A DNA stretch of 64,000 nucleotides, from positions 124,001 to 188,000 of IMG/VR virus record IMGVR_UViG_3300047445_000186, one strand, 5' to 3'. This document shows positions 5,490 through 63,327 of this stretch, piece by piece; positions within the stretch are counted from its first letter, which is position 1; every line of letters begins with the position of its first letter. The translations under genes were made by a program, and so were the position numbers. The notes below the pieces were generated by a model. That model was not told the DNA's origin and ran no database searches. It saw only the letters and a program-made list of their open reading frames with translations.

Positions 5490-6044
5490 ATGAGAATCGT
5501 AAATTTATTCGCAGGCCCGGGCACCGGCAAATCCACCACCGCTGCCGCGCTGTTCACTGAGCTGAAGTACCGCGGCATCAACTGCGAGTACATTCCAGAG
5601 TACGCGAAGGACGCTGCTTGGGAGGGCCGCGGCAAGAAGTTCTTCCGCGCTCAACAGCTCATTTACGGGAAGCAATCGTTCCGCATCGAGCGCGTCGCCG
5701 AAGAAGTAGATCTGATGGTCACTGACTGCCCGCTGATGATGGGCTTGGTGTACATGCCAGAGGATTATCCAATGCCTTCGCTACGTGATGTGATCGTCGA
5801 AGATCACGATCGGTACGACAATCTGAACATCTTCCTGAAGCGGAACAAGCCGTTCAATCCAAAGGGCCGGAATCAGAACGAAGCAGAAGCGAAGGAGCTC
5901 GATCGCGACATCAGGAACATGCTCATCGATCGTGACGTGAACTTCCATGAGCTGGATTTCAGCCGAAAGAACGTGAAGGAAATCATTCGTCAAATGATCA
6001 ACGTTGGTTGGGCGAATGACATCCCTGCGCTTCTAAATAAGTGA
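5490..6044 (+). CDS. P-loop nucleotide kinase / AAA_28 (NadR-like) protein
   Basis: Walker A GPGTGKST; EYAKD; GRNQ. Confidence 0.75.
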   Translation: MRIVNLFAGPGTGKSTTAAALFTELKYRGINCEYIPEYAKDAAWEGRGKKFFRAQQLIYGKQSFRIERVAEEVDLMVTDCPLMMGLVYMPEDYPMPSLRDVIVEDHDRYDNLNIFLKRNKPFNPKGRNQNEAEAKELDRDIRNMLIDRDVNFHELDFSRKNVKEIIRQMINVGWANDIPALLNK

Positions 6045-44573: not shown

Positions 44574-44645
44574 TCCGGTGTAGCTCAGCGGTAGAGCAGC
44601 TCGCTGTTAACGAGTTGGTCGTTGGTTCGATCCCAGCCTCCGGAG
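44574..44645 (+). tRNA. tRNA-Asn(GTT), no encoded CCA
   Basis: Loop CTGTTAA; ends G-CAA. Confidence 0.85.
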
Positions 44646-44661
44646 CAAAGAACATTTCTAT

Positions 44662-44756
44662 TCCCCTGTACTCTAATTGGTAAGAGACCTGGCTGTTAAC
44701 CAGACGTAAAGGCCGTAAGGCGTAATATGCAAGTTCGAAGCTTGCTGGGGGAGCCA
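44662..44756 (+). tRNA. tRNA-Asn(GTT) with long variable arm
   Basis: Loop CTGTTAA; ~25-nt variable region with GCC-GTAA-GGC hairpin; CCA. Confidence 0.78.
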
Positions 44757-44890: not shown

Positions 44891-44967
44891 GCCTCTTTAG
44901 CTCAACTGGATAGAGCACTGGCCTACGAAGCCGGGGGTTGCAGGTTCGAATCCTGTGAGAGGCACCA
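44891..44967 (+). tRNA. tRNA-Arg(ACG)
   Basis: Loop CTACGAA, CCA. Confidence 0.92.
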
Positions 44968-44973
44968 GAATAT

Positions 44974-45034
44974 TCCGACCGTCAGTGCAAGGTTATCCTT
45001 CTACGATTCCCCCTTGCGCGATCTCTTTGTCGGA
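44974..45034 (+). ncRNA. Y-RNA-like ncRNA inside tRNA array
   Basis: TCCGAC/GTCGGA stem, CCG-N9-GGTTATC, GTGCAAGG/CCTTGCGC stem, 3' ATCTCTTTGT shared with 54929-54985. Confidence 0.7.
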
Positions 45035-45042
45035 CGAAACAT

Positions 45043-45116
45043 AGGTCCTTGGTGTAATGGCAGCATGACGGTCTCCAAAACCGTTCGTGGGGGTTCGAGT
45101 CCCTCAGGACCTGCCA
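45043..45116 (+). tRNA. tRNA-Trp(CCA)
   Basis: ACGGT-CTCCAAA-ACCGT, CCA. Confidence 0.92.
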
Positions 45117-45260: not shown

Positions 45261-45416
45261 ATTACGACAGGAGCAAGGCGCCCTCGGGCTTGTGGCTAGC
45301 TGTGGAAAGTGACCCTCCACCTCCAACGTCGTTCCAATCAAAGCTTCGTCGTTCCATTCACACGGGTACGCGACTCCGTTTCTCGCAAGAGGTGCAGGGC
45401 GAAGCAACGCAATTAT

Positions 45417-45489
45417 AGGTGAGCCAGCGGCGCTGGACAAGAGCATCCAAAGCTCGAAGTTGGTAGTTCGACTCTGCCATCGCCTGCCA
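45417..45489 (+). tRNA. Atypical tRNA-Trp(CCA), minimal D arm
   Basis: D arm CCAGC-GGC-GCTGG; loop ATCCAAA; TTCGACT; CCA. Confidence 0.7.
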
Positions 45490-45494
45490 ATTAT

Positions 45495-45566
45495 AGGTGA
45501 TCCATGGGCCGTGGACATGAGCCTCCAAAACTCGTTGGGACAGTTCGACTCTGTCATTGCCTGCCA
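45495..45566 (+). tRNA. Atypical tRNA-Trp(CCA), minimal D arm
   Basis: D arm CCATG-GGC-CGTGG; loop CTCCAAA; CCA. Confidence 0.7.
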
Positions 45567-45574
45567 AAATTTAT

Positions 45575-46410: not shown

Positions 46411-47256
46411 ATGAAACACGTACTCACCGCCCTTCTGATCGCTGCCTCGCAGTCCGCGTTCGCTGGATTCTTCAGCGACAGCTTCGACATCGAGCTACAG
46501 AACATCCTCACGGTCCGAAAGGATTCCGTGACGGTCGAGCTGCACGCGCCAAAGAAGCAGCTGCAGTCGAAACCTGCCGTGATCTTCATGGGCGGATGCG
46601 ACGGCTCGGTCTCGGACGGTGCGAAGGTCGTGATCAAGAGCCTCGTCGATCGAGGTGTTCTCGTGGCCGAGCTGAAGTCGCTCAGAATCTGGGGCCGCAG
46701 CGCGAACGCCTGCACCGGTGAAAAGGGCGCCCTTGAAGGTTGGCAGCGAGCGGAGGAAGCGTACCGAGCCCGTGATGAACTCGTGAAGCGAGGATTGGCG
46801 AACGAGGAGAACGTCGGCCTGGTCGGTTTTTCACATGGTGGATGGGCGATCTCGTACGCAGTGTTCCTGAACTCGACGGTCACGTACGAGACGAAGAACT
46901 TCAAGCCCTTCAAGGCGGCCGTGGCGTTCTACCCATGGTGCCAAGAGGACTCGCTCTCGCACGATCTGCGAACTCCGACCCTGATGCTGATCGGCGCGAA
47001 GGACACGTGGACTCCGCTCGATCGCTGCACGAGACTCGAAGAACGTGCAAAGAAGGCTGGCACGCATGATCAACCGCTCGAGCTGGTCGTGTACGAGAAT
47101 GCATCGCACTCGTACGACAACGACAAGCCGCGGCGATCCGCTCCGACTGGCAAGGGTTTCGCTGACCTCTGGTACGACAAGGAAGCGACTGACGACTCGC
47201 TCGCCAGGACGATGGCCTGGTTCGAGAAGTACATGGAGCTCGGGTCGGACCTCTAA
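46411..47256 (+). CDS. Exported dienelactone hydrolase-family alpha/beta hydrolase
   Basis: Signal peptide; GFSHGG, AFYPWC, LIGAKDTW, YENASHSYD. Confidence 0.85.
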   Translation: MKHVLTALLIAASQSAFAGFFSDSFDIELQNILTVRKDSVTVELHAPKKQLQSKPAVIFMGGCDGSVSDGAKVVIKSLVDRGVLVAELKSLRIWGRSANACTGEKGALEGWQRAEEAYRARDELVKRGLANEENVGLVGFSHGGWAISYAVFLNSTVTYETKNFKPFKAAVAFYPWCQEDSLSHDLRTPTLMLIGAKDTWTPLDRCTRLEERAKKAGTHDQPLELVVYENASHSYDNDKPRRSAPTGKGFADLWYDKEATDDSLARTMAWFEKYMELGSDL

Positions 47257-47311
47257 TCCGTAACCTGAATTCGCAGTCTACCCCGGCTTTGTCCGGGGTA
47301 GAATCGTTTCC

Positions 47312-52043: not shown

Positions 52044-52493
52044 ATGGACACACAAGAAGAACAGTACGAAAAGGCCGCGCGAGCTGGGCTGATTCCGTAC
52101 ATCCGAGACGACGCAGGCACACCGCACTATCTGATGATGGTTGCATCGAATCCGGTGTATGGTGGCCCGCGACCGATGATCAGCAAGGGCAAAATCGAAG
52201 ACGGCGAGAACACTTTCGAGTGCGCAGTTCGTGAAGCCGAAGAAGAGCTTGGGCTTGTTCAGCAGAATATGCAGAGCACCCCGTTCCTCTTGGCCGATGA
52301 GCACGTCACGCTTCGATCGGGTGCGTATCAGTTGACCGTTTACGCCGTTCAGATCTATGATCGGTGGAACTTCGACAAATGGTGCGATGAGACCGAGTAC
52401 ACGGCATGGTTCTCGCTGGAGGAATTCCGTGAAAAGGGACGTAGAGACCACATCCAGTATGTGGAGAGACTTGAAGCGATTTTGAGATCGTAG
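52044..52493 (+). CDS. NUDIX hydrolase
   Basis: KGKIEDGENTFECAVREAEEELG. Confidence 0.9.
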   Translation: MDTQEEQYEKAARAGLIPYIRDDAGTPHYLMMVASNPVYGGPRPMISKGKIEDGENTFECAVREAEEELGLVQQNMQSTPFLLADEHVTLRSGAYQLTVYAVQIYDRWNFDKWCDETEYTAWFSLEEFREKGRRDHIQYVERLEAILRS

Positions 52494-52521: not shown

Positions 52522-53118
52522 ATGGCTGGCCATAGAATTTTGAAGTTGGATGTTCAGGGTACCCCTGACAAGTGGATTGATTACGAACAAGCGATTACGT
52601 ACCATGCCAAGGGCCTGGTGGCGTGGCAGCTCGGCGATGAAAATCACACACGCTTCCGTGGCGGTGAAAACCGAATCACAGGCCAGATTTCGCAAATCTC
52701 CTCAGCTCCAATCATTGCTGTGCGCGGCGAAGGCGCTGGAAAGCGCGCGAATCGCGTCCCAACTCTGACGAACCCAGAGCTGTTCGCCCGTGATCGTCAC
52801 ACTTGCGCGTACTGCGGACGCACGTTCTCTGAACATCGTCTGACTCGTGACCACATCATCCCGGTCTCCCGCGGTGGTAAGGACATCTGGACGAACGTCG
52901 TGACTGCTTGCGATTACGACAATCACAAGAAGGACGATCACTTGCTGCAGGAAATCGGCATGGAATTGCTGTACGTTCCGTACACGCCGAATCGCGCTGA
53001 GTCGCTGATCTTGAAGGGTCGTAAGATCCTCCCTGTTCAGGCCGAGTACTTGGCACAGTTCATTCCAGAATCGAGCCGAGCGCATTCGATCCTGAACGAG
53101 TTGATGAACGTTCACTAA
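52522..53118 (+). CDS. HNH endonuclease (McrA-like)
   Basis: RDRHTCAYCG..TRDHIIPVSRGG..WTNVVTAC..NHKK. Confidence 0.9.
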   Translation: MAGHRILKLDVQGTPDKWIDYEQAITYHAKGLVAWQLGDENHTRFRGGENRITGQISQISSAPIIAVRGEGAGKRANRVPTLTNPELFARDRHTCAYCGRTFSEHRLTRDHIIPVSRGGKDIWTNVVTACDYDNHKKDDHLLQEIGMELLYVPYTPNRAESLILKGRKILPVQAEYLAQFIPESSRAHSILNELMNVH

Positions 53119-53834: not shown

Positions 53835-54329
53835 ATGAAAGTCACTGAACTCCTCACAGAAAAGAAGCATTCCGGCGCTTATTACAACGCTGGCTACGAT
53901 GCAGAAAAGAAGGCCGTTGTCGGCGCTGTTAAGGATTGGGTCGAGCGAATCGGCGCTTCCCCTGAAGACCTGGCTGCTGCTTACCTGGAAGCCAAGAAGC
54001 TTCCTTCGTACAAGGCGCTGACCAAGATCGCTCCAGACATCTCGAACGCGCGCGAAGCAAAGAACGGCACATTCTCGTTCAAGCACCCATCCAAAGCCGC
54101 ACACTCTGAGGCTCCAAAGTACAACGTTCGCGCATCAGGCCAAATTCGTGGATCTGACGCAGGTTCGTACTACTCCCCAGGTACACGCCCAACGCACCGC
54201 CTGGCATCACCAAAGCCACGCCTCGTTGCTGGTAATCCAGTGAAGTCGCTCGTGCTCGTGTACGATGGCGCTTTCAAGGAACTCGTTCTGAAGGCCCAGA
54301 AGGTTATTGCCCGCGACACCGTCAAGTAA
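53835..54329 (+). CDS. Late protein, candidate head-internal
   Basis: TAAATA 53799; MKVTELLTEK. Confidence 0.68.
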   Translation: MKVTELLTEKKHSGAYYNAGYDAEKKAVVGAVKDWVERIGASPEDLAAAYLEAKKLPSYKALTKIAPDISNAREAKNGTFSFKHPSKAAHSEAPKYNVRASGQIRGSDAGSYYSPGTRPTHRLASPKPRLVAGNPVKSLVLVYDGAFKELVLKAQKVIARDTVK

Positions 54330-54375
54330 TTGAAACACTGCCGTGGCTTCGGTCACGGCAGAACATGAGTACCAC

Positions 54376-54858
54376 ATGGAATACAACGTTCGAATTGCAT
54401 CCTTCTTCTGCATTTTCGCGACCCTTGCTACGATGGCAGGCCTGACGTACTGGTACTGGTTCGATCCTCTGTACCACGTGTACACGCTAATTGCTGGTAT
54501 TCCACTCCTGTACACATTTGGCGCGATCTTCGGAGCCGTTGCCGAGCTGTTCGGCTTTGAAGCTGTTCAGCCTGAAGAAGGTGAACAGCAGGAAGAACTC
54601 TCGTACACGCCGATCGACCCAACCGAGTACGACGTGACCACATCTGAGAATATCGTCGGCACGTACAAGGGCGAGAACATCTACGAGTACCTGATGAACG
54701 GTGGCGAAAAGTTCTGGTACTACAATGTTCTGCAGGAATCTGAGTTCGAGAACTTCCACGCACCTGAAGGTTCCTCATTCCTTCTGGTCCAGCCTGGAAT
54801 CCTGTACGTCACGGCCCCGCCTGACCACGAACCTGAACCCGAAAATACTGCAGTCTGA
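54376..54858 (+). CDS. Membrane protein with acidic C-terminal domain
   Basis: Two TM helices. Confidence 0.6.
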   Translation: MEYNVRIASFFCIFATLATMAGLTYWYWFDPLYHVYTLIAGIPLLYTFGAIFGAVAELFGFEAVQPEEGEQQEELSYTPIDPTEYDVTTSENIVGTYKGENIYEYLMNGGEKFWYYNVLQESEFENFHAPEGSSFLLVQPGILYVTAPPDHEPEPENTAV

Positions 54859-54921
54859 ACTGCACCCGGCGTCATAGAATTCATTTCTCGACGCTAAATA
54901 CAAACGCTGCAGAAATGCAGC

Positions 54922-54998
54922 GCTGCTTTCGAACCGAAGATAATGGGTTATCGGCTAAGTTTCCCACTATCATCTCTTTGTTCGAGCATTTTAGCAGC
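54922..54998 (+). ncRNA. Y-RNA-like ncRNA 1 upstream of Ro60
   Basis: TCGAAC-C-GAA / TTTGTTCGA bulged-C helix; GATAATGGG/CCCACTATC; CCG-N9-GGTTATC. Confidence 0.78.
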
Positions 54999-55024
54999 CT
55001 CTTCAACACTTACTTCAATCTCAT

Positions 55025-55172
55025 TCAGCCGCAGCAAGTTGGTTATCAACTACTACGACCTGGACCGTCCGCCCTGTAGAAACACTAAACTCTCTACTGG
55101 GTAACCCGTTGACTCCTCTGGTTATTGGAGCGCCTCGCCGAGAGGGCAGACTTTTGTCTGAAGATCGGCTGA
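55025..55172 (+). ncRNA. Y-RNA-like ncRNA 2 with large multi-helix domain
   Basis: TCAGCCG/CGGCTGA closing stem; CCG-N9-GGTTATC; internal hairpins. Confidence 0.6.
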
Positions 55173-55358
55173 TGTTGCAAGTACAAGGAACTTGATCGGA
55201 TACCGCAACTTAAATCGCGGTGTAGGCGGAGCCCATGCTCGAAAGAGATACTCTGCTGAAGTCTCCAACAGCAATTTTTGCTGGATGGGATTGTAGTAAG
55301 TGCTGTCACGCGCCTTTGTTCACTGCGCTAAAGTGAACCGATAATCAGGAGAGAACTC

Positions 55359-56978
55359 ATGAACATGTACACCGACCACGCCGCTTCTCTGAACGCCGTT
55401 CAGACTTCCACCCCACAGACGGAAGCAATTCCTGGCCGCGAAGCCGAGATGAAGCTGAACAACGCTGGTGGATTCACGTTCACTCTTGATCAGTGGGGCG
55501 TCCTCGATCGCTTCATCATGATCGGTTCCGAGAACGGGAACTACTACGTCGGTCAAAAGGACGTGATGAAGCAATCGTTCGCGAACACCCTGAAGTGTAT
55601 CGCTGAAGACGGTCTGCGTGCTGTCGCTCGTGCTCTCGAGTACTCAACCTCTGGTCGCGCTCCGAAGAACGACCCTGCTCTGGTTGTGCTCGCGCTCGCC
55701 GCATCGAAGGGAACGCCTGAAGTTCAATCCGCTGCTTACGACGCCCTGCCAAAGGTCGCTCGTACCGGTACCCATCTGTTCACGTTCGTCTCGATTCTGA
55801 ACTCCCTCGGGAAGTGGAACGCCGCTGCAAAGCGCGGCCTGGCGAAGTGGTACACGAACCGTTCGATCGACAAGCTCGCGATCCAAGTGCTGAAGTACCA
55901 GCAGCGCAATGGCTGGTCGCACCGCGACGTCCTGCGTCTGGCACACGTGAAGCCGCAGAACGACATCCAGACGAATCTGTTCAAGTACATCACGAAGGGT
56001 GGCGACGCTCTCGTGCAAGGCTCGCCGATTCCGCAGCTCGTGATCGACTTCGAATTCCTGAAGCGCGCCGAGTCGGCCAAGGATGTCGTTCGTCTGATCG
56101 AGTCGAATCCATCGATCGCATGGGAACTCGTTCCTACGCAATTCCTGAAGGATCCGGACGTGCTGATGGCGCTCCTCCCTTCGATGGGCATGACCGCTGT
56201 GATCCGTCAACTGGGTAAGCTCACTGCCGCTGGCGTGATCAAGCCGATGTCGGAAGGCGAGAAGTTGGTCGTCGCGAAGCTCTCGGATGCCGAAGCAATC
56301 AAGCGTGGCCGTGTCCATCCGATCACTATCCTCCAAGCCCTGAAGCAGTACCAAGCTGGTCATGGTGAAAAGGGTTCGTTGGTCTGGTCTCCAGTTCAAC
56401 GCGTCGTGTCGGCCCTGGATGACTCGTTCTACTCTGCGTTCACGCTTGGCGAGGACAAGAAGGAGAATCACTTCATCGCTTGCGACATCTCCGGCTCCAT
56501 GACCATGGACAGCGCGAAGGTGATCGGTTCGCCGAACCTCTTGGCTGGTGAAGTGGCTGCGGTGTTCGCGATGGCGATCGCTCGTACCCAATCGAACTAT
56601 TTCCTCGCTGGTTTCAAGCAGAACTTGGAACCACTGAAGATCTCGCCGACGATGCGTCTCGCTGACGCGTTGAACGCAATGCGTGCTATGCACTGGCAAG
56701 GCGGCTCGACCGACTGTGCTAAGGCATTCGAGTACGCGCTCCAGAACGGTATCGCGGTGGACAAGTTCACCGTGATTACCGACAATGAAACGTACGCGGG
56801 TGGCCAAGCCCCAGTGCAGGCGCTCAAGAAGTATCGTGACCGTACTGGTCGCGCTGCGAAGTCGATCGTGATTGCTACCTCGGTATCTGAATTCACGATC
56901 GCCGATCCGAAGGACGGTGGTATGTTGGACATCGCAGGGTTTGACTCGGCTGCTCCACAGATCATCGCTGATTTCTAA
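55359..56978 (+). CDS. rsr: Ro60/TROVE-domain RNA-binding protein with C-terminal vWA
   Basis: NNAGGF..LDRF..GSE.G.YY; KYQQRNGWSHRDVLRLAH; DISGSM; ITDNET; GFD. Confidence 0.95.
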   Translation: MNMYTDHAASLNAVQTSTPQTEAIPGREAEMKLNNAGGFTFTLDQWGVLDRFIMIGSENGNYYVGQKDVMKQSFANTLKCIAEDGLRAVARALEYSTSGRAPKNDPALVVLALAASKGTPEVQSAAYDALPKVARTGTHLFTFVSILNSLGKWNAAAKRGLAKWYTNRSIDKLAIQVLKYQQRNGWSHRDVLRLAHVKPQNDIQTNLFKYITKGGDALVQGSPIPQLVIDFEFLKRAESAKDVVRLIESNPSIAWELVPTQFLKDPDVLMALLPSMGMTAVIRQLGKLTAAGVIKPMSEGEKLVVAKLSDAEAIKRGRVHPITILQALKQYQAGHGEKGSLVWSPVQRVVSALDDSFYSAFTLGEDKKENHFIACDISGSMTMDSAKVIGSPNLLAGEVAAVFAMAIARTQSNYFLAGFKQNLEPLKISPTMRLADALNAMRAMHWQGGSTDCAKAFEYALQNGIAVDKFTVITDNETYAGGQAPVQALKKYRDRTGRAAKSIVIATSVSEFTIADPKDGGMLDIAGFDSAAPQIIADF

Positions 56979-57001
56979 TGTAAGTACGTTTTAGATAGTC
57001 C

Positions 57002-59441: not shown

Positions 59442-59769
59442 CTTCGTTCCTGAAATTGGCGGCGTGTACAAGTTCGCGTCGTGTGGTGTTCAAGTCGTGC
59501 TCTCAGAGCCGATGAAGACAAGTGGTGGAGTGATGTGCGTGAAGACTGCACAGATCTTCATGGACTTCGACGGTGAGAAGCGAATCCTGCTGAACAGTGA
59601 TGGGACCGTGTTCCACTACCCAGCGACTGCGCATCCAGACATCGGCTCGATCACGAAGCACTTGGAACTCGCAGCTGAATCGCACGAATCCAAGGGCTGG
59701 ACGTGGAAGCACTTCAATGAAGTCGTGCTCCGTGTTCCGGCCAAGAAGAAGAAACGGAAAAAGAAGTGA
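59431..59769 (+). CDS. Hypothetical protein with basic tail
   Basis: ORF track. Confidence 0.55.
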   Translation: MNNNFVPEIGGVYKFASCGVQVVLSEPMKTSGGVMCVKTAQIFMDFDGEKRILLNSDGTVFHYPATAHPDIGSITKHLELAAESHESKGWTWKHFNEVVLRVPAKKKKRKKK

Positions 59770-60332
59770 CAGTGAAAATGATCCTTGCTGTTGATCAAGG
59801 GAACGCGATCGGCTGGCAAGATGGGCGCCTGCCCTGGAAGATTTCGCGTGACATGCTCCGCTTCAAGGCGCTCACAACGGGTAGTACTGTTGTGATGGGT
59901 CGGAAGACGTTCGAGAGCCTTGGCCGCCCGCAAGGTCTGCCGAATCGGCAGAACGTCGTGATCACCACGCAGAAGCACGACATGACCGGGAATCCGCTGT
60001 TCTTCCGCGATGGCAAGGATCCGTTCCGCTCGTTCGTGCAAGTGCATCAAGCGTGCCTTGGCTGCGAACCCGCGGATCTGTGGGTGATTGGTGGTGGAAC
60101 GCTGTACGATGCAGCTATCGAACAGAGCTTGGTCGATGAGATTTATCTGACGCTGGTGCACACCAATTCGGGTGCTGATGTTCAGTTGAAGCATGATCTC
60201 GCGGCATGGAAGCTGTTCGTTCTGCGCGAGCAAAGCCGAGGAAATATCTGGAACGTCGCCGAGTACGAGCAACACCAGGTAGAGGGCGATGTTCCCGCGG
60301 TAACTTTCATCACTTTAAAGAAACAAAAATGA
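59766..60332 (+). CDS. folA: Dihydrofolate reductase
   Basis: AIG..LPWK..D..RFK.LT..VVMGRKTFESL..LPNRQN; VIGGG. Confidence 0.95.
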   Translation: MTVKMILAVDQGNAIGWQDGRLPWKISRDMLRFKALTTGSTVVMGRKTFESLGRPQGLPNRQNVVITTQKHDMTGNPLFFRDGKDPFRSFVQVHQACLGCEPADLWVIGGGTLYDAAIEQSLVDEIYLTLVHTNSGADVQLKHDLAAWKLFVLREQSRGNIWNVAEYEQHQVEGDVPAVTFITLKKQK

Positions 60333-61368: not shown

Positions 61369-63327
61369 ATGTCAGCTCTCAAGTCTCTCTCGGCGAAATA
61401 CGCAGAGAAATTCGCAGCACCGGAAGTCATGTCGCTCGAAGCGTACCTGGACCTGTGCAAAACCGAACCTCTGGCATATGCCACCGCCGCAGAGCGGATG
61501 GTCGCAGCCATTGGCCAACCTGTTGTGGTTGACACGTCGGAAGACCCACGTCTCTCGCGCATCCACAGCAACAAGAAGATCCGCACGTACGATGCATTCA
61601 AGGAATACTACGGCGGTGAAGATCAGATCGAACGTCTCGTTGCGTACTTCCGCAATGCAGCCGCAGGTCTGGAAGAATCGAAGCAGATTCTGTACCTGAA
61701 GGGTCCAGTCGGCGGCGGGAAGTCCAGCCTGGTCGAGCTCCTGAAGGCTCTGATGGAAAAGCACCCGTTCTACGCTCTGTACGATGCGAGCGAAAAGGAT
61801 GCGGAACTGCGGACCTCGCCAGTGTTCGAATCGCCGCTCGGTCTGTTCAACAAGCACGACCCCGATCACCAAGCGGTTCTCGCTGACTCGGGCATCCCAG
61901 TGGGCTACGCTGGTCAAGCAGTTCTGTCGGGCTGGGCACTGAAGAAGCTCGAAGAATTCGGCGGCGACATCACGCGTTTCAGCGTCGTGAAGCTCTGGCC
62001 GAACAAGGACACGCAAGTCGGCGTGATGAAGGTCGAGCCGGGCGACGAGAACAACCAAGACGTCTCTGTGCTGGTCGGCAAGACTGATCTGCGGAAGCTC
62101 GAGAAGTTCAGCCAGAATCACCCGTACGCTTACACATACGGTGGTGGTCTGAATCGCACGAACCAAGGCCTGATGGACTTCGCCGAAATGTTCAAGGCGA
62201 ACATCAAGACGCTGAACCCGTTGCTGATGGCTACGCAAGAGCACAACTACAACGGTACCGAAGCGATCCCAGCGATGCCTTACACCGGCATTATCTGCGC
62301 GCACAGCAACGAGTCCGAGTGGTTCGCGTTCAAGAACAACAAGACGAACGAAGCGTTCCTTGACCGTGTGTACATCGTGGACGTGCCGTACTGCCTCCGC
62401 GTCGACGAAGAAGTGAAGATCTATCAGAAGCTGATCGCGGGCTCCTCGCTCTCGAAGGCACCGATGGCTCCGTACACTCTCGAGCTGCTCGCTCAGTGGA
62501 TGGTTCTGACTCGCCTGAAGGAGCCAGAGAACTCGACGCTGATGGCGAAGATGAAGGTCTATAACGGCGAGAACGTGAAGGACACGATGCCGAACGCAAA
62601 GCCGTACGAAGAGTACCGCGATGCTGCCGGGAACGACGAAGGTATGAGCGGCCAAAGCACTCGATTCGCGTTCAAGATCCTGTCGCAATCGTTCGATCTG
62701 CGCCCTGAAGAACAACAGGCAAACCCTGTGGATCTGATGTACGTGATCGACGCCGCGGTCAAGAAGGAATCGCTGCCGGAAGAAACCGAGAAGAAGCTCC
62801 TGACGCTGATCAAGGATCTGCAACGGAAGTACTTCGATTTCCTCGAAAAGGAACTGCGCGCTGCCTACCTCGACTCGTTCAACAGCTTCGGCCAGAACAT
62901 GTTCGATCGGTACTTCCTGTTCGCTGAAGCCTGGATTGCTGATGAGCAATGCCGCGATCCGGAAACTCATCAGATGATGAACCGCGAGAAGCTGAACGCA
63001 GCTCTCGAAGAGACCGAAAAGCCGGCTGGGATCGTGAATGCCAAGGACTTCCGGAACGAGATCGTGAACTACGTGCTGCGGTACAAGAACAAGCACGACG
63101 TCGCTCCTCGCTGGAACGAGTACGAGAAGATCAAGGTCGTGCTCGAGAAGCGGATGTTCAGCGCAACCGAGAACATCATGCCAGTCGTGTCGTTCGGTCC
63201 GAAGGGTGACAAGGAAGCTGAAGAGAAGCACACGAAGTTCGTCGAGCGCATGATCGAGAACGGGTACAGCGAAAACCAAGTGAAGATCCTGGTGTCCTGG
63301 TGGTCGCAAAACAAGAAAGCTGCATAA
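61369..63327 (+). CDS. prkA: PrkA/YeaG family serine kinase (AAA+)
   Basis: AAERM..AIG; GPVGGGKSS; EPGDENNQD; EMFKA; AHSNESEW. Confidence 0.95.
   Translation: MSALKSLSAKYAEKFAAPEVMSLEAYLDLCKTEPLAYATAAERMVAAIGQPVVVDTSEDPRLSRIHSNKKIRTYDAFKEYYGGEDQIERLVAYFRNAAAGLEESKQILYLKGPVGGGKSSLVELLKALMEKHPFYALYDASEKDAELRTSPVFESPLGLFNKHDPDHQAVLADSGIPVGYAGQAVLSGWALKKLEEFGGDITRFSVVKLWPNKDTQVGVMKVEPGDENNQDVSVLVGKTDLRKLEKFSQNHPYAYTYGGGLNRTNQGLMDFAEMFKANIKTLNPLLMATQEHNYNGTEAIPAMPYTGIICAHSNESEWFAFKNNKTNEAFLDRVYIVDVPYCLRVDEEVKIYQKLIAGSSLSKAPMAPYTLELLAQWMVLTRLKEPENSTLMAKMKVYNGENVKDTMPNAKPYEEYRDAAGNDEGMSGQSTRFAFKILSQSFDLRPEEQQANPVDLMYVIDAAVKKESLPEETEKKLLTLIKDLQRKYFDFLEKELRAAYLDSFNSFGQNMFDRYFLFAEAWIADEQCRDPETHQMMNREKLNAALEETEKPAGIVNAKDFRNEIVNYVLRYKNKHDVAPRWNEYEKIKVVLEKRMFSATENIMPVVSFGPKGDKEAEEKHTKFVERMIENGYSENQVKILVSWWSQNKKAA

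What the first reader, a model, noticed from the sequence alone, without database searches (positions are those of the whole stretch)
54870..56978. Phage Ro60 with adjacent Y-RNA-like genes resembling vertebrate Y RNAs
Seen: the ~490-nt gap before the TROVE gene has TAGAAT (54875) and TAAATA (54895) promoter cores and two RNAs carrying CCG-N9-GGUUAUC. RNA1 (54922-54998) forms UCGAAC-C(bulge)-GAA / UUU-GUUCGA plus an upper stem GAUAAUGGG/CCCACUAUC with a 3' bulge. RNA2 (55025-55172) has a UCAGCCG/CGGCUGA stem enclosing several hairpins. Established (recalled, not looked up): Ro60 binds a bulged-C helix, and human Y4/Y1 begin GGUCCGAUGGUAGUGGGUUAUC / GGUCCGAAGGUAGUGAGUUAUC. The phage CCGAAGAUAAUGGGUUAUC is nearly identical, with the same spacing. 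Neither RNA shows the tRNA-like T-loop of YrlA, so standard models may miss them. Inference: a phage Ro-Y RNP with a minimal and a large-effector Y RNA, used in RNA repair or decay.
Basis: partly seen in the sequence, partly recalled or inferred. Interest (0 to 1): 0.82.

Follow-up and report, generated by a model that had tools for sequence, protein, structure and literature searches.

The report
Jumbo phage Ro60 with Y RNAs
A giant soil phage carries the ring-shaped RNA-binding protein Ro60 plus three small "Y RNA" genes built on the same bulged-stem plan as human Y RNAs; phage Ro60/Y RNA pairs are already known, but one of these RNAs is a long form seen so far only in this group of phages.

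Summary
The core of the finding is real. Window 55359-56978 encodes a full Ro60. The 500-nt gap upstream holds two Y-RNA genes on the same strand.

- **RNA1 (54922-54998):** A covariance model built only from other phages' loci finds it at 47 bits (E 2e-9).
- **RNA2:** mis-delimited. Covariation in 19 related loci shows it spans 55020-55289 (270 nt), closed by a 10-bp helix.
- **RNA3 (44974-45034):** a third copy inside the tRNA array.

All three share one plan: lower stem, bulged C, CG/UG, 9-bp upper stem, UUAUC, 3' bulge. This is the plan of the Rfam vertebrate Y_RNA and nematode sbRNA consensus.

The resemblance is not special to this phage. The same model hits 143 sites in 80 bacterial rsr loci, and known mycobacteriophage Y RNAs carry the motif. 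Phage Ro60/Y RNAs have been published since 2014.

What looks new is the RNA2 class. It is a ~210-340-nt Y RNA with a conserved effector domain that is not recognisably tRNA-like. It was found only in phages whose Ro60 is at least about 54% identical to this one.

Ro60 binding, expression and function remain untested.

The parts
54875..54900 (+). Promoter-like conserved block, TAGAAT-N14-TAAATA. Its core CGCTAAATA lies at 54892-54900.
   Evidence: Conserved in relatives L001, L002 and L005 while the flanks diverge. CGCTAAATA occurs 5 times on the + strand of the window against 0.08 expected; the three sites whose gene context I checked (43221, 50378, 54892) lie outside ORFs of 110 aa or more. 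It is not a sigma-70-type match. The promoter role is inferred.
54905..54923 (+). Leader hairpin between the promoter-like block and RNA1. Its 3' arm overlaps RNA1's outer stem.
   Evidence: The stem sequence differs but still pairs in relatives (GCUGCA/UGCAGC; GUUGA/UCAAC; GCUGA/UCAGC; GUGAG/CUCAC). The terminator scan saw it as a palindrome.
54922..54998 (+). RNA1, a minimal hairpin-type Y RNA. Outer stem 54922-26/54994-98; lower stem 54929-34/54980-85; bulged C 54935; GAA/UUU 54936-38/54977-79; upper stem 54939-47/54963-71; UUAUC 54948-52; 3' bulge 54972-76.
   Evidence: Independent model R2 scores it 47.2 bits, E 2.4e-9. Rfam sbRNA RF01656 gives 30.4 bits, E 3.3e-4. Family covariation: 88.5% of cells paired against 37-49% for slid controls. 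MFE fold z -2.27.
54999..55019 (+). Linker without any G between RNA1 and RNA2; a possible processing site.
   Evidence: Read directly from the sequence. Similar C/A/U-only linkers (CAACCUCAAC-like) precede RNA2 in relatives. A processing role is inferred.
55020..55289 (+). RNA2, a long Y RNA. Closing helix 55020-29/55280-89; bulged C 55030; upper stem GUUGG/CCAAC 55038-42/55265-69; UUAUC 55043-47. The interior holds several hairpins, including one with T-arm proportions (55178-94), a UACC..GGU hairpin (55202-21), GUA (55222-24), a long hairpin (55225-57) and GAA (55258-60).
   Evidence: Closing helix across 19 loci: 93.7% paired against 34-46% for slid controls, with 83 double-change cells against 17-28. 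RNAalifold: 11 of 17 pairs have compensatory changes. The MFE fold contains the helix, z -2.0. The 3' module is shared by about 26 viral loci at the same position.
55347..55352 (+). Shine-Dalgarno-like AGGAGA upstream of the Ro60 ATG.
   Evidence: Read directly from the sequence.
55359..56978 (+). Ro60 (TROVE ring plus vWA domain; MIDAS-type DISGS motif present).
   Evidence: Pfam, PHROG 850, PDB 2nvo/1yvp/9nen.
44974..45034 (+). RNA3, a third hairpin-type Y RNA set between tRNA-Arg (44891-44967) and tRNA-Trp (45043-45116). Lower stem UCCGAC/GUCGGA; bulged C 44980; upper stem 44984-92/45012-20; UUAUC 44993-97.
   Evidence: Pattern match. R2 scores it 29.2 bits, E 6.5e-5. MFE fold z -2.31. tRNA coordinates.

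Best explanation
The window carries a phage-encoded Ro60 ribonucleoprotein system: the Ro60 gene and three Y-RNA genes.

**RNA-protein recognition.** Each RNA has the conserved Ro60-recognition helix: a lower stem, a bulged C, CG/UG, then a 9-bp upper stem ending in GG followed by UUAUC. Ro60 is inferred to bind each RNA there.

**The three RNAs.** RNA1 and RNA3 are minimal hairpin Y RNAs. RNA2 carries a ~220-nt structured domain. By analogy with Yrn1 and YrlA tethering PNPase, this domain is inferred to recruit a partner protein and so direct Ro60 towards structured or damaged RNAs during infection.

**Expression.** RNA1 and RNA2 are probably transcribed with Ro60 from a phage promoter whose core is CGCTAAATA at 54892, and then cut out of the leader. 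RNA3 is probably released by tRNA-processing enzymes from the tRNA-array transcript.

**Shown versus inferred.** Shown: the gene identities, the conserved architecture, covariation, strand and position linkage to Ro60. Inferred: binding, processing, the partner and the biological role.
For: - **Ro60 identity:**
- **Motif enrichment:** CCG-N9-GGTTATC occurs 3 times against 0.02 expected.
- **Related loci:** 62 viral loci encode Ro60 relatives. GGTTATC lies on the Ro60 strand, mostly within about 1 kb upstream, in most of them.
- **Independent model:** R2 excludes the window and its closest relatives. It finds RNA1 (47.2 bits) and RNA3 (29.2 bits) and nothing else below E 0.9 in 64 kb with filters off.
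- **Strand linkage:** 45 R2 hits in viral loci, all on the + strand. 143 hits in 80 bacterial rsr loci, 139 on the + strand. Motif strand bias is 87:9 in viral and 264:21 in bacterial loci.
- **Pairing:** scores of 17/18 or better occur in 22 and 88 cases, against 0 with shuffled downstream sequence.
- **Short-form covariation:** 183 double-change cells against 29-67 for slid controls.
- **RNA2:** closing helix covaries and the interior hairpins are conserved.
- **Shared plan with eukaryotic Y RNAs:** Rfam sbRNA and Y_RNA consensus lines show the same layout.
- **Precedents:** Y RNAs encoded next to Rsr and processed from one precursor; PNPase tethering (PMC4201824). Thermus phage Ro60 binds two upstream Yrl RNAs and host PNPase in vitro (PMC12135203).
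- **No + strand terminator-like site** lies between RNA2 and the ORF.
Against: - There is no expression or binding evidence. No RNA-seq run was listed for this DNA. The only runs holding it are rhizosphere DNA metagenomes.
- No curated Rfam family reaches its gathering score.
- The short-form seed alignment was chosen by a pairing score, so its paired fraction is partly built in. This is mitigated by model R2, the shuffles and the slid controls.
- The promoter is only a recurrent motif.
- No RNA-repair or decay enzyme was found among the neighbouring genes examined. They are a NUDIX protein, an HNH endonuclease, hydrolases, UDP-glucose dehydrogenase, DHFR and PrkA.
- The partner of RNA2 is unknown, and its domain does not match the tRNA-like module that defines YrlA.
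Confidence: 0.8

Rival explanations
1. The Y-like modules upstream of the ORF are cis-acting Ro60 operators within the Ro60 mRNA leader (autoregulation). They would not be separate, stable Y RNAs.
For: They lie on the same strand immediately upstream. No + strand terminator-like site separates RNA2 from the ORF. RNA2 ends about 70 nt before the ATG in the window, and about 60-70 nt before it in the related loci.
Against: RNA3 has the same module but sits 10 kb away inside a tRNA array with no Ro60 ORF. In M. smegmatis the same layout yields processed, Rsr-bound Y RNAs (PMC4201824). The two readings are not mutually exclusive.
Confidence: 0.12
2. RNA2 is a diverged YrlA: its 3' domain is a degenerate tRNA mimic that still engages a tRNA-binding effector. 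It would not be a new kind of effector domain.
For: The order of elements matches YrlA: UUAUC (YrlA's conserved YUAY), a variable region, a hairpin with a 5-bp stem and 7-nt loop, a stem-loop, a conserved UA, another stem-loop, then the 3' strand (PMC4201824; bioRxiv 10.1101/312249). In some relatives the first hairpin's loop reads xUCGAAx, like a T-loop.
Against: There is no YrlA (RF02553) match at E up to 10, either in the window gap or in nine loci of the RNA2 class. The window's loop is ACAAGGA. A 6-8-nt linker separates the two hairpins, and the 'D' position is a long closed hairpin without a D-loop.
Confidence: 0.25
3. RNA2 is the 148-nt molecule drawn by the first reader (55025-55172), closed by UCAGCCG/CGGCUGA.
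For: The pairing exists, and it is the MFE of the 161-nt segment.
Against: That fold is no better than shuffles (z -0.99). The 3' arm aligns to a non-complementary motif in relatives. The alternative 10-bp helix covaries strongly.
Confidence: 0.04
4. The hairpins are chance stem-loops or terminators with no relation to Ro60.
For: No curated family reaches its threshold.
Against: The evidence against is the model E-values, the strand and position linkage to Ro60 in about 140 independent loci, the covariation and the shuffling controls.
Confidence: 0.01

Closest known systems
Bacterial and mycobacteriophage Rsr with YrlA/YrlB Y RNAs (Chen et al. 2014, PMC4201824; Rfam RF02553)
   Same: Y RNAs are encoded within about 1 kb of Ro60 on the same strand, usually two or more per locus. 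They share the conserved CGAA-type 5' strand and a conserved YUAY at about nt 22-25. Mycobacterium phage Myrna's two RNAs carry GGCCG..GGUUAUC exactly like the window's. One RNA per locus is a simple long hairpin (YrlB/Yrn2 type), like RNA1 and RNA3.
   Different: None of the window's RNAs has the T-arm and D-arm tRNA-like module that defines YrlA (no RF02553 hit). RNA2 is 2-3 times longer, with a different conserved domain. One copy sits inside a tRNA array.
Thermus phage phiLo Ro60 with Yrl1/Yrl2 (PMC12135203, 2025; PDB 9KOP, 9L5Y)
   Same: A phage-encoded Ro60 with two Y-like RNAs directly upstream. Binding to Ro60 and to host PNPase was shown in vitro.
   Different: The proteins are only distantly related (E 5.6e-8, against 1e-98 to Deinococcus Rsr). 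The phiLo RNAs were identified by a CGAA motif. Whether they share the upper-stem/UUAUC plan was not examined here.
Vertebrate Y RNAs and nematode stem-bulge RNAs (Rfam RF00019, RF01656)
   Same: The layout is the same, position by position: lower stem, bulged C, CG/UG, two unpaired purines, 8-9-bp upper stem ending GGG, UUAUC opening the loop, a 3' bulge, then (A)CUUG (consensus lines). RNA1 scores 30.4 bits on RF01656. A relative (L052:2538-2647) scores 31.7 bits on RF00019.
   Different: All scores are below the gathering score of 38. There is no Pol III-type oligo-U tail. The genes are linked to Ro60 and to tRNAs. The UUAUC/upper-stem role in metazoan DNA replication (PMC4726728) has no obvious phage counterpart.
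Deinococcus radiodurans Rsr/Yrn1/PNPase (RYPER)
   Same: It is the closest solved protein relative (2nvo, 1.4e-98). It is the model for how a Y RNA's distal domain tethers an exoribonuclease.
   Different: No PNPase interaction was tested or is implied by sequence here. The RNA2 domain is unrelated in sequence to anything in Rfam.

Membership tests
Ro60 / TROVE protein | TROVE (HEAT-repeat ring) domain followed by a vWA domain with a MIDAS motif | tested here: met
   Pfam TROVE 6.4e-27 and vWA_Ro60 3.7e-47. Full-length matches to 2nvo, 1yvp and 9nen. A DISGS motif is read from the sequence.
Y RNA (functional class) | Terminal helix formed by the 5' and 3' ends, carrying the conserved bulged Ro60-binding site (..CCGA../..UUG..) | tested here: met
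   RNA1, RNA2 and RNA3 all have it. Covariation. Independent model hits.
Y RNA (functional class) | Encoded next to the Ro60 gene (the bacterial and phage rule) | tested here: met
   RNA1 and RNA2 lie within 440 nt upstream on the same strand. The same arrangement holds in about 60 viral and 80 bacterial loci. RNA3 is 10 kb away.
Y RNA (functional class) | Physically bound and stabilised by Ro60; a discrete stable transcript | not testable with these tools
   No RNA run was listed. RIP, EMSA or Northern blots are needed.
YrlA (Rfam RF02553) | tRNA-like effector module with conserved T-arm and D-arm sequences; score of at least 69 bits | tested here: not met
   No hit at E up to 10 in 54800-55420, nor in nine RNA2-class loci. 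More distant phage loci do give 37-45 bits.
Vertebrate Y_RNA (RF00019) / nematode sbRNA (RF01656) | Covariance-model score at or above the gathering score (38 bits) | tested here: not met
   RNA1 scores 30.4 bits on RF01656 and gives no RF00019 hit. The resemblance in layout is real, but membership is not established.
YrlB / Yrn2-type hairpin Y RNA | Long hairpin with the Ro60 site and a small loop, with no tRNA-like module. The class is described in PMC4201824; no curated model exists. | tested here: inconclusive
   RNA1 and RNA3 fit the verbal description. There is no reference model or sequence set to score against.

The most novel reading that the evidence does not exclude
There are two parts to this reading.

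1. The RNA2 class would be a new, phage-clade-specific kind of Y RNA. Its ~220-nt domain (UACC-hairpin-GGU, GUA, hairpin, GAA core) would recruit a partner other than the tRNA-type effectors of YrlA, giving these jumbo phages their own Ro60-based RNA-handling machine.

2. The position-by-position identity of the Ro60-binding stem, upper stem and UUAUC across phages, many bacterial phyla, nematodes and vertebrates would mean all Y RNAs are truly homologous. UUAUC and the upper stem would then be an ancient Ro60-linked feature rather than a metazoan replication invention.
Probability: 0.3. Interest if true: 0.72.

Novelty: new variant of a known kind. Interest (0 to 1): 0.5.

Why it matters
**Effectors.** Ro60/Y RNA particles are conserved from bacteria to humans and are a major autoantigen, yet what most Y RNAs recruit is unknown. 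Here the Y-RNA effector domain has been rebuilt into a large structured module in a coherent set of about 26 related phage loci. That gives a defined RNA for pull-downs and structural work.

**Evolution.** One small model captures the Ro60-binding, upper-stem and UUAUC unit in phages and in many bacterial phyla, and the same unit matches metazoan consensus models. This bears on two questions: whether bacterial and animal Y RNAs are homologous, which some reviews deny (PMC4726728), and what the UUAUC motif is for.

**Annotation.** Hairpin-type Y RNAs are invisible to current Rfam thresholds, although several appear to exist per rsr locus.

Tried and rejected
- **Rfam at gathering thresholds** on the window and on 20 related loci found only tRNAs.
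- **Nucleotide search of cultured phages** with 54300-57000 matched only a short, ~75-nt stretch within the Ro60 coding region in mycobacteriophages. No cultured relative of the RNA region was found.
- **Sigma-70 promoter scan** gave no hits in 54700-55500.
- **RNA-seq evidence:** none was listed. Only DNA runs from rhizosphere metagenomes hold the locus.
- **Consensus folding of full-length RNA2** (MAFFT plus RNAalifold) recovered only the terminal helices and single hairpins, because the interior aligns poorly. The interior topology therefore rests on per-sequence folds anchored on GUGUAGG and one local alignment.
- **A weak model hit at 47236-47300** (12 bits, E about 1) is a terminator-like hairpin at the end of an ORF. 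It was rejected.
- **The extended pattern TARAAT-N14-TAAATA** is not enriched in the window. Only the CGCTAAATA core is.
- **The review PMC10870794** is not held.
- **No third covariance model** (for RNA2) was built, because of its length and the alignment quality.
Full report
**What is in the window**

The window matches a 331,776-bp IMG/VR contig at 100% over the Ro60 gene (L020). The DNA occurs in rhizosphere metagenomes.

- The ORF at 55359-56978 (+) is a complete Ro60. Pfam gives vWA_Ro60 3.7e-47 and TROVE 6.4e-27.
- It is about equally close to D. radiodurans Rsr (1.4e-98), Xenopus Ro60 (2.9e-95) and human RO60 (8e-94). It is far from the one solved phage Ro60, from Thermus phage phiLo (5.6e-8).
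- Upstream lies a 500-nt gap with no conserved ORF.
- CCG-N9-GGTTATC occurs three times in 64 kb (44979, 54934, 55029), all on the + strand, against 0.02 expected.

**RNA1**

- Lower stem UCGAAC/GUUCGA, bulged C 54935, GAA/UUU.
- 9-bp upper stem GAUAAUGGG/CCCACUAUC, UUAUC opening the loop, and a 5-nt 3' bulge.
It is replaced by a different complementary pair of strands in L001, L002 and L005.
- With permissive thresholds the only Rfam match in the gap is RNA1 to nematode stem-bulge RNA RF01656 (30.4 bits, gathering score 38, E 3.3e-4). Stem-bulge RNAs are regarded as the nematode homologues of Y RNAs (PMC4726728).

**Evidence from related loci**

Sixty-two viral loci encode Ro60 relatives at 33-100% identity. 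In most, GGTTATC lies on the Ro60 strand within about 1 kb upstream, often in 2-5 copies.

A script anchored on CG-N9-10-GTTAYC recovered one recurrent plan:

- a 7-nt lower strand, C, CG, two bases, a 9-nt upper strand ending GG, then UUAUC;
- a loop;
- a 9-nt complementary strand starting CC, a 5-7-nt bulge ending UU, UG, and the lower complement.

On 32 short examples, 88.5% of cells pair, against 37-49% when partners are slid. There are 183 double-sided changes against 29-67.

Those examples were picked by a pairing score, so I built a second model (R2) from 25 hairpins of other phages only, leaving out the window and its closest relatives.

- With filters off, R2 finds RNA1 at 47.2 bits (E 2.4e-9) and the 44970-45038 copy at 29.2 bits (E 6.5e-5). 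Nothing else in the window scores below E 0.9.
- In the other viral loci it gives 45 hits, all on the Ro60 strand, including 20 that were not in its seed alignment.
- The motif's strand bias is 87:9.
- Pairing scores of 17/18 or better occur 22 times, against 0 after shuffling the downstream sequence.

The proposed UCAGCCG/CGGCUGA closure (55025-55172) folds no better than shuffles (z -0.99). Its 3' arm aligns to non-complementary sequence in relatives.

In 19 loci the 5' strand instead pairs with a strand 210-340 nt downstream, about 60-70 nt before the Ro60 ATG.

- Ten pairs are 93.7% paired, against 34-46% for slid controls, with 83 double-sided changes against 17-28.
- RNAalifold on seven sequences gives 11 of 17 pairs with compensatory changes.
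- In the window this helix is 55020-29 with 55280-89, so RNA2 is 270 nt. The MFE of 55018-55292 contains the helix (z -2.0).

The interior is variable, but its 3' third has a fixed topology:

- a hairpin with T-arm proportions (window 55178-94);
- a short linker;
- a hairpin framed by invariant UACC...GGU, whose inner pairs covary;
- GUA;
- a long hairpin;
- GAA, then the upper-stem 3' strand.

The signature GUGUAGG...YYGAA...YCCRA sits at the same place in about 26 viral loci, all with Ro60 at least about 54% identical to the window's. It is at no comparable place in 80 bacterial loci.

The RNA2 class gives no YrlA match even at E 10. The order of elements does parallel YrlA, so a strongly diverged tRNA mimic is a live alternative.

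**RNA3**

RNA3 (44974-45034) has the same plan. It is wedged between tRNA-Arg (ends 44967) and tRNA-Trp (starts 45043). Release by tRNA-processing enzymes is the obvious inference. It also argues that these modules act in trans and are not merely leader elements of the Ro60 mRNA.

**Transcription**

- No sigma-70-type promoter is called.
- CGCTAAATA occurs five times in the window, all on the + strand, against 0.08 expected. One is upstream of the tRNA array (43221) and one directly upstream of RNA1 (54892).
- No + strand terminator-like site separates RNA2 from the ORF.

I infer one transcript covering leader hairpin, RNA1, a G-less linker, RNA2 and Ro60, with the RNAs cut out. This is how M. 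smegmatis handles its Y RNAs (PMC4201824).

**Comparison with what is known**

- Phage Ro60 with neighbouring Y RNAs is published. YrlA-like RNAs were reported in 254 bacteria and 22 phages (PMC4201824). Thermus phage phiLo Ro60 binds two upstream Yrl RNAs and host PNPase in vitro (PMC12135203). TROVE proteins are noted in jumbo phages (PMC7824862).
- Mycobacterium phage Myrna's two upstream RNAs read GGCCGGA..GGUUAUC and GGCCGAA..GGUUAUC. The YrlA papers mention a conserved YUAY/UA at nt 22-25.
- R2 hits 143 sites in 80 bacterial rsr loci, 139 of them on the rsr strand. The phyla include Verrucomicrobiota, Chloroflexota, Myxococcota, Alphaproteobacteria, Armatimonadota and others. The motif strand bias there is 264:21.

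So the vertebrate-like core is the general bacterial and phage Y-RNA core, not a peculiarity of this phage.

The likeness to animal Y RNAs is nevertheless concrete. The Rfam consensus lines for RF00019 and RF01656 show the same layout. Several phage hairpins score 25-34 bits on them, and L052:2538-2647 scores 31.7 bits on vertebrate Y_RNA. These scores are below threshold, so membership is not claimed.

**Mechanism and confidence**

- Shown: a bona fide Ro60 gene; three RNAs with the Ro60-site architecture; covariation; tight linkage of this architecture to Ro60 genes across about 140 loci.
- Inferred from the Deinococcus, Salmonella and phiLo precedents: Ro60 binds the bulged helix; RNA2's domain tethers a partner (PNPase or another RNA enzyme); the particle acts on structured or damaged RNA during infection.
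- The examined neighbours give no functional hint. They are a NUDIX protein, an HNH endonuclease, hydrolases, UDP-glucose dehydrogenase, DHFR and PrkA.

I put 0.8 on 'Ro60 plus cognate Y RNAs'. I put much less on any specific role.

**Novelty and interest**

The locus is a new member of a known system. The RNA2 class is a new variant: long, clade-specific, not recognisably tRNA-like. The placement of a Y RNA inside a tRNA array is also new.

A specialist would not be startled. They would gain an unannotated Y-RNA class and a compact model that links phage, bacterial and animal Y RNAs. Interest is about 0.5.

**Limits**

- There are no expression or binding data.
- E-values from the shortened calibration are rough.
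- The RNA2 interior rests on anchored per-sequence folds, not a full structural alignment.
- The host is unknown.

Noticed in passing
L050:5289-5416 and 5507-5635; L051:2192-2315; L048:6497-6623: These are tRNA-like genes that score 47-56 bits on the Rfam tRNA model. Each has a 63-69-nt insert in place of the anticodon loop. In L050:5289-5416, read base by base, the insert is a circularly permuted Y module: upper 3' strand, bulge, UG, lower stem closed by a small loop, then bulged C, CG, upper 5' strand and UUACC; the other three loci were not inspected at this level. Such a molecule would be a YrlA with its ends at the acceptor stem instead of the Ro60 stem. ARAGORN calls none of them.
   Followed up: partly
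L065-L144 (80 bacterial rsr loci): The phage-derived hairpin model hits 143 sites, often 2-6 per locus, nearly all on the rsr strand. Hairpin-type Y RNAs therefore seem common and multi-copy in many phyla, but no Rfam family covers them.
   Followed up: partly
window 2381, 19901, 43221, 50378, 54892 (+): CGCTAAATA occurs five times, all on the + strand, against 0.08 expected. The three sites checked for gene context (43221, 50378, 54892) lie outside ORFs of 110 aa or more. It is probably this phage's promoter core.
   Followed up: partly
window 45412-45489 and 45490-45567 (+): These are two tandem 78-nt elements inside the tRNA array. The first folds as a cloverleaf with a 3-nt D-loop, a CCA anticodon, a T-arm-like GUUCGACUC and an encoded 3' CCA. 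Neither ARAGORN nor Rfam (E up to 1) calls them.
   Followed up: partly
window 44662-44756 (+): A 95-nt tRNA with a GUU (Asn) anticodon and a long extra arm. That is unusual for an Asn tRNA. A normal tRNA-Asn lies just upstream at 44574-44646.
   Followed up: no
L009, L010, L011, L015, L021, L031, L032, L040, L044, L004 (RNA2 interiors): A near-invariant hairpin, GCAAGUUGAAAGACAAGCC, sits in the variable region of RNA2 in one subgroup of phages. It is absent from the window's RNA2.
   Followed up: no
window 54999-55019, and the equivalent linkers in the related loci: The spacer before RNA2 contains no G and resembles CAACCUCAAC in many loci. It may be a single-stranded processing site.
   Followed up: no
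window 61369-63327 (+): A full-length PrkA-type AAA serine kinase (Pfam 4e-145). Also nearby: DHFR (59766-60332), a NUDIX protein (52044-52493), an HNH endonuclease (52522-53118) and two alpha/beta hydrolases after the tRNA array.
   Followed up: no
L065 (contig labelled as an Acinetobacter MAG, 36.6 kb): It encodes a Ro60 65% identical to the window's, far closer than any other 'bacterial' locus, with a Y-type motif 520 nt upstream. It is probably a phage contig binned into a MAG.
   Followed up: no
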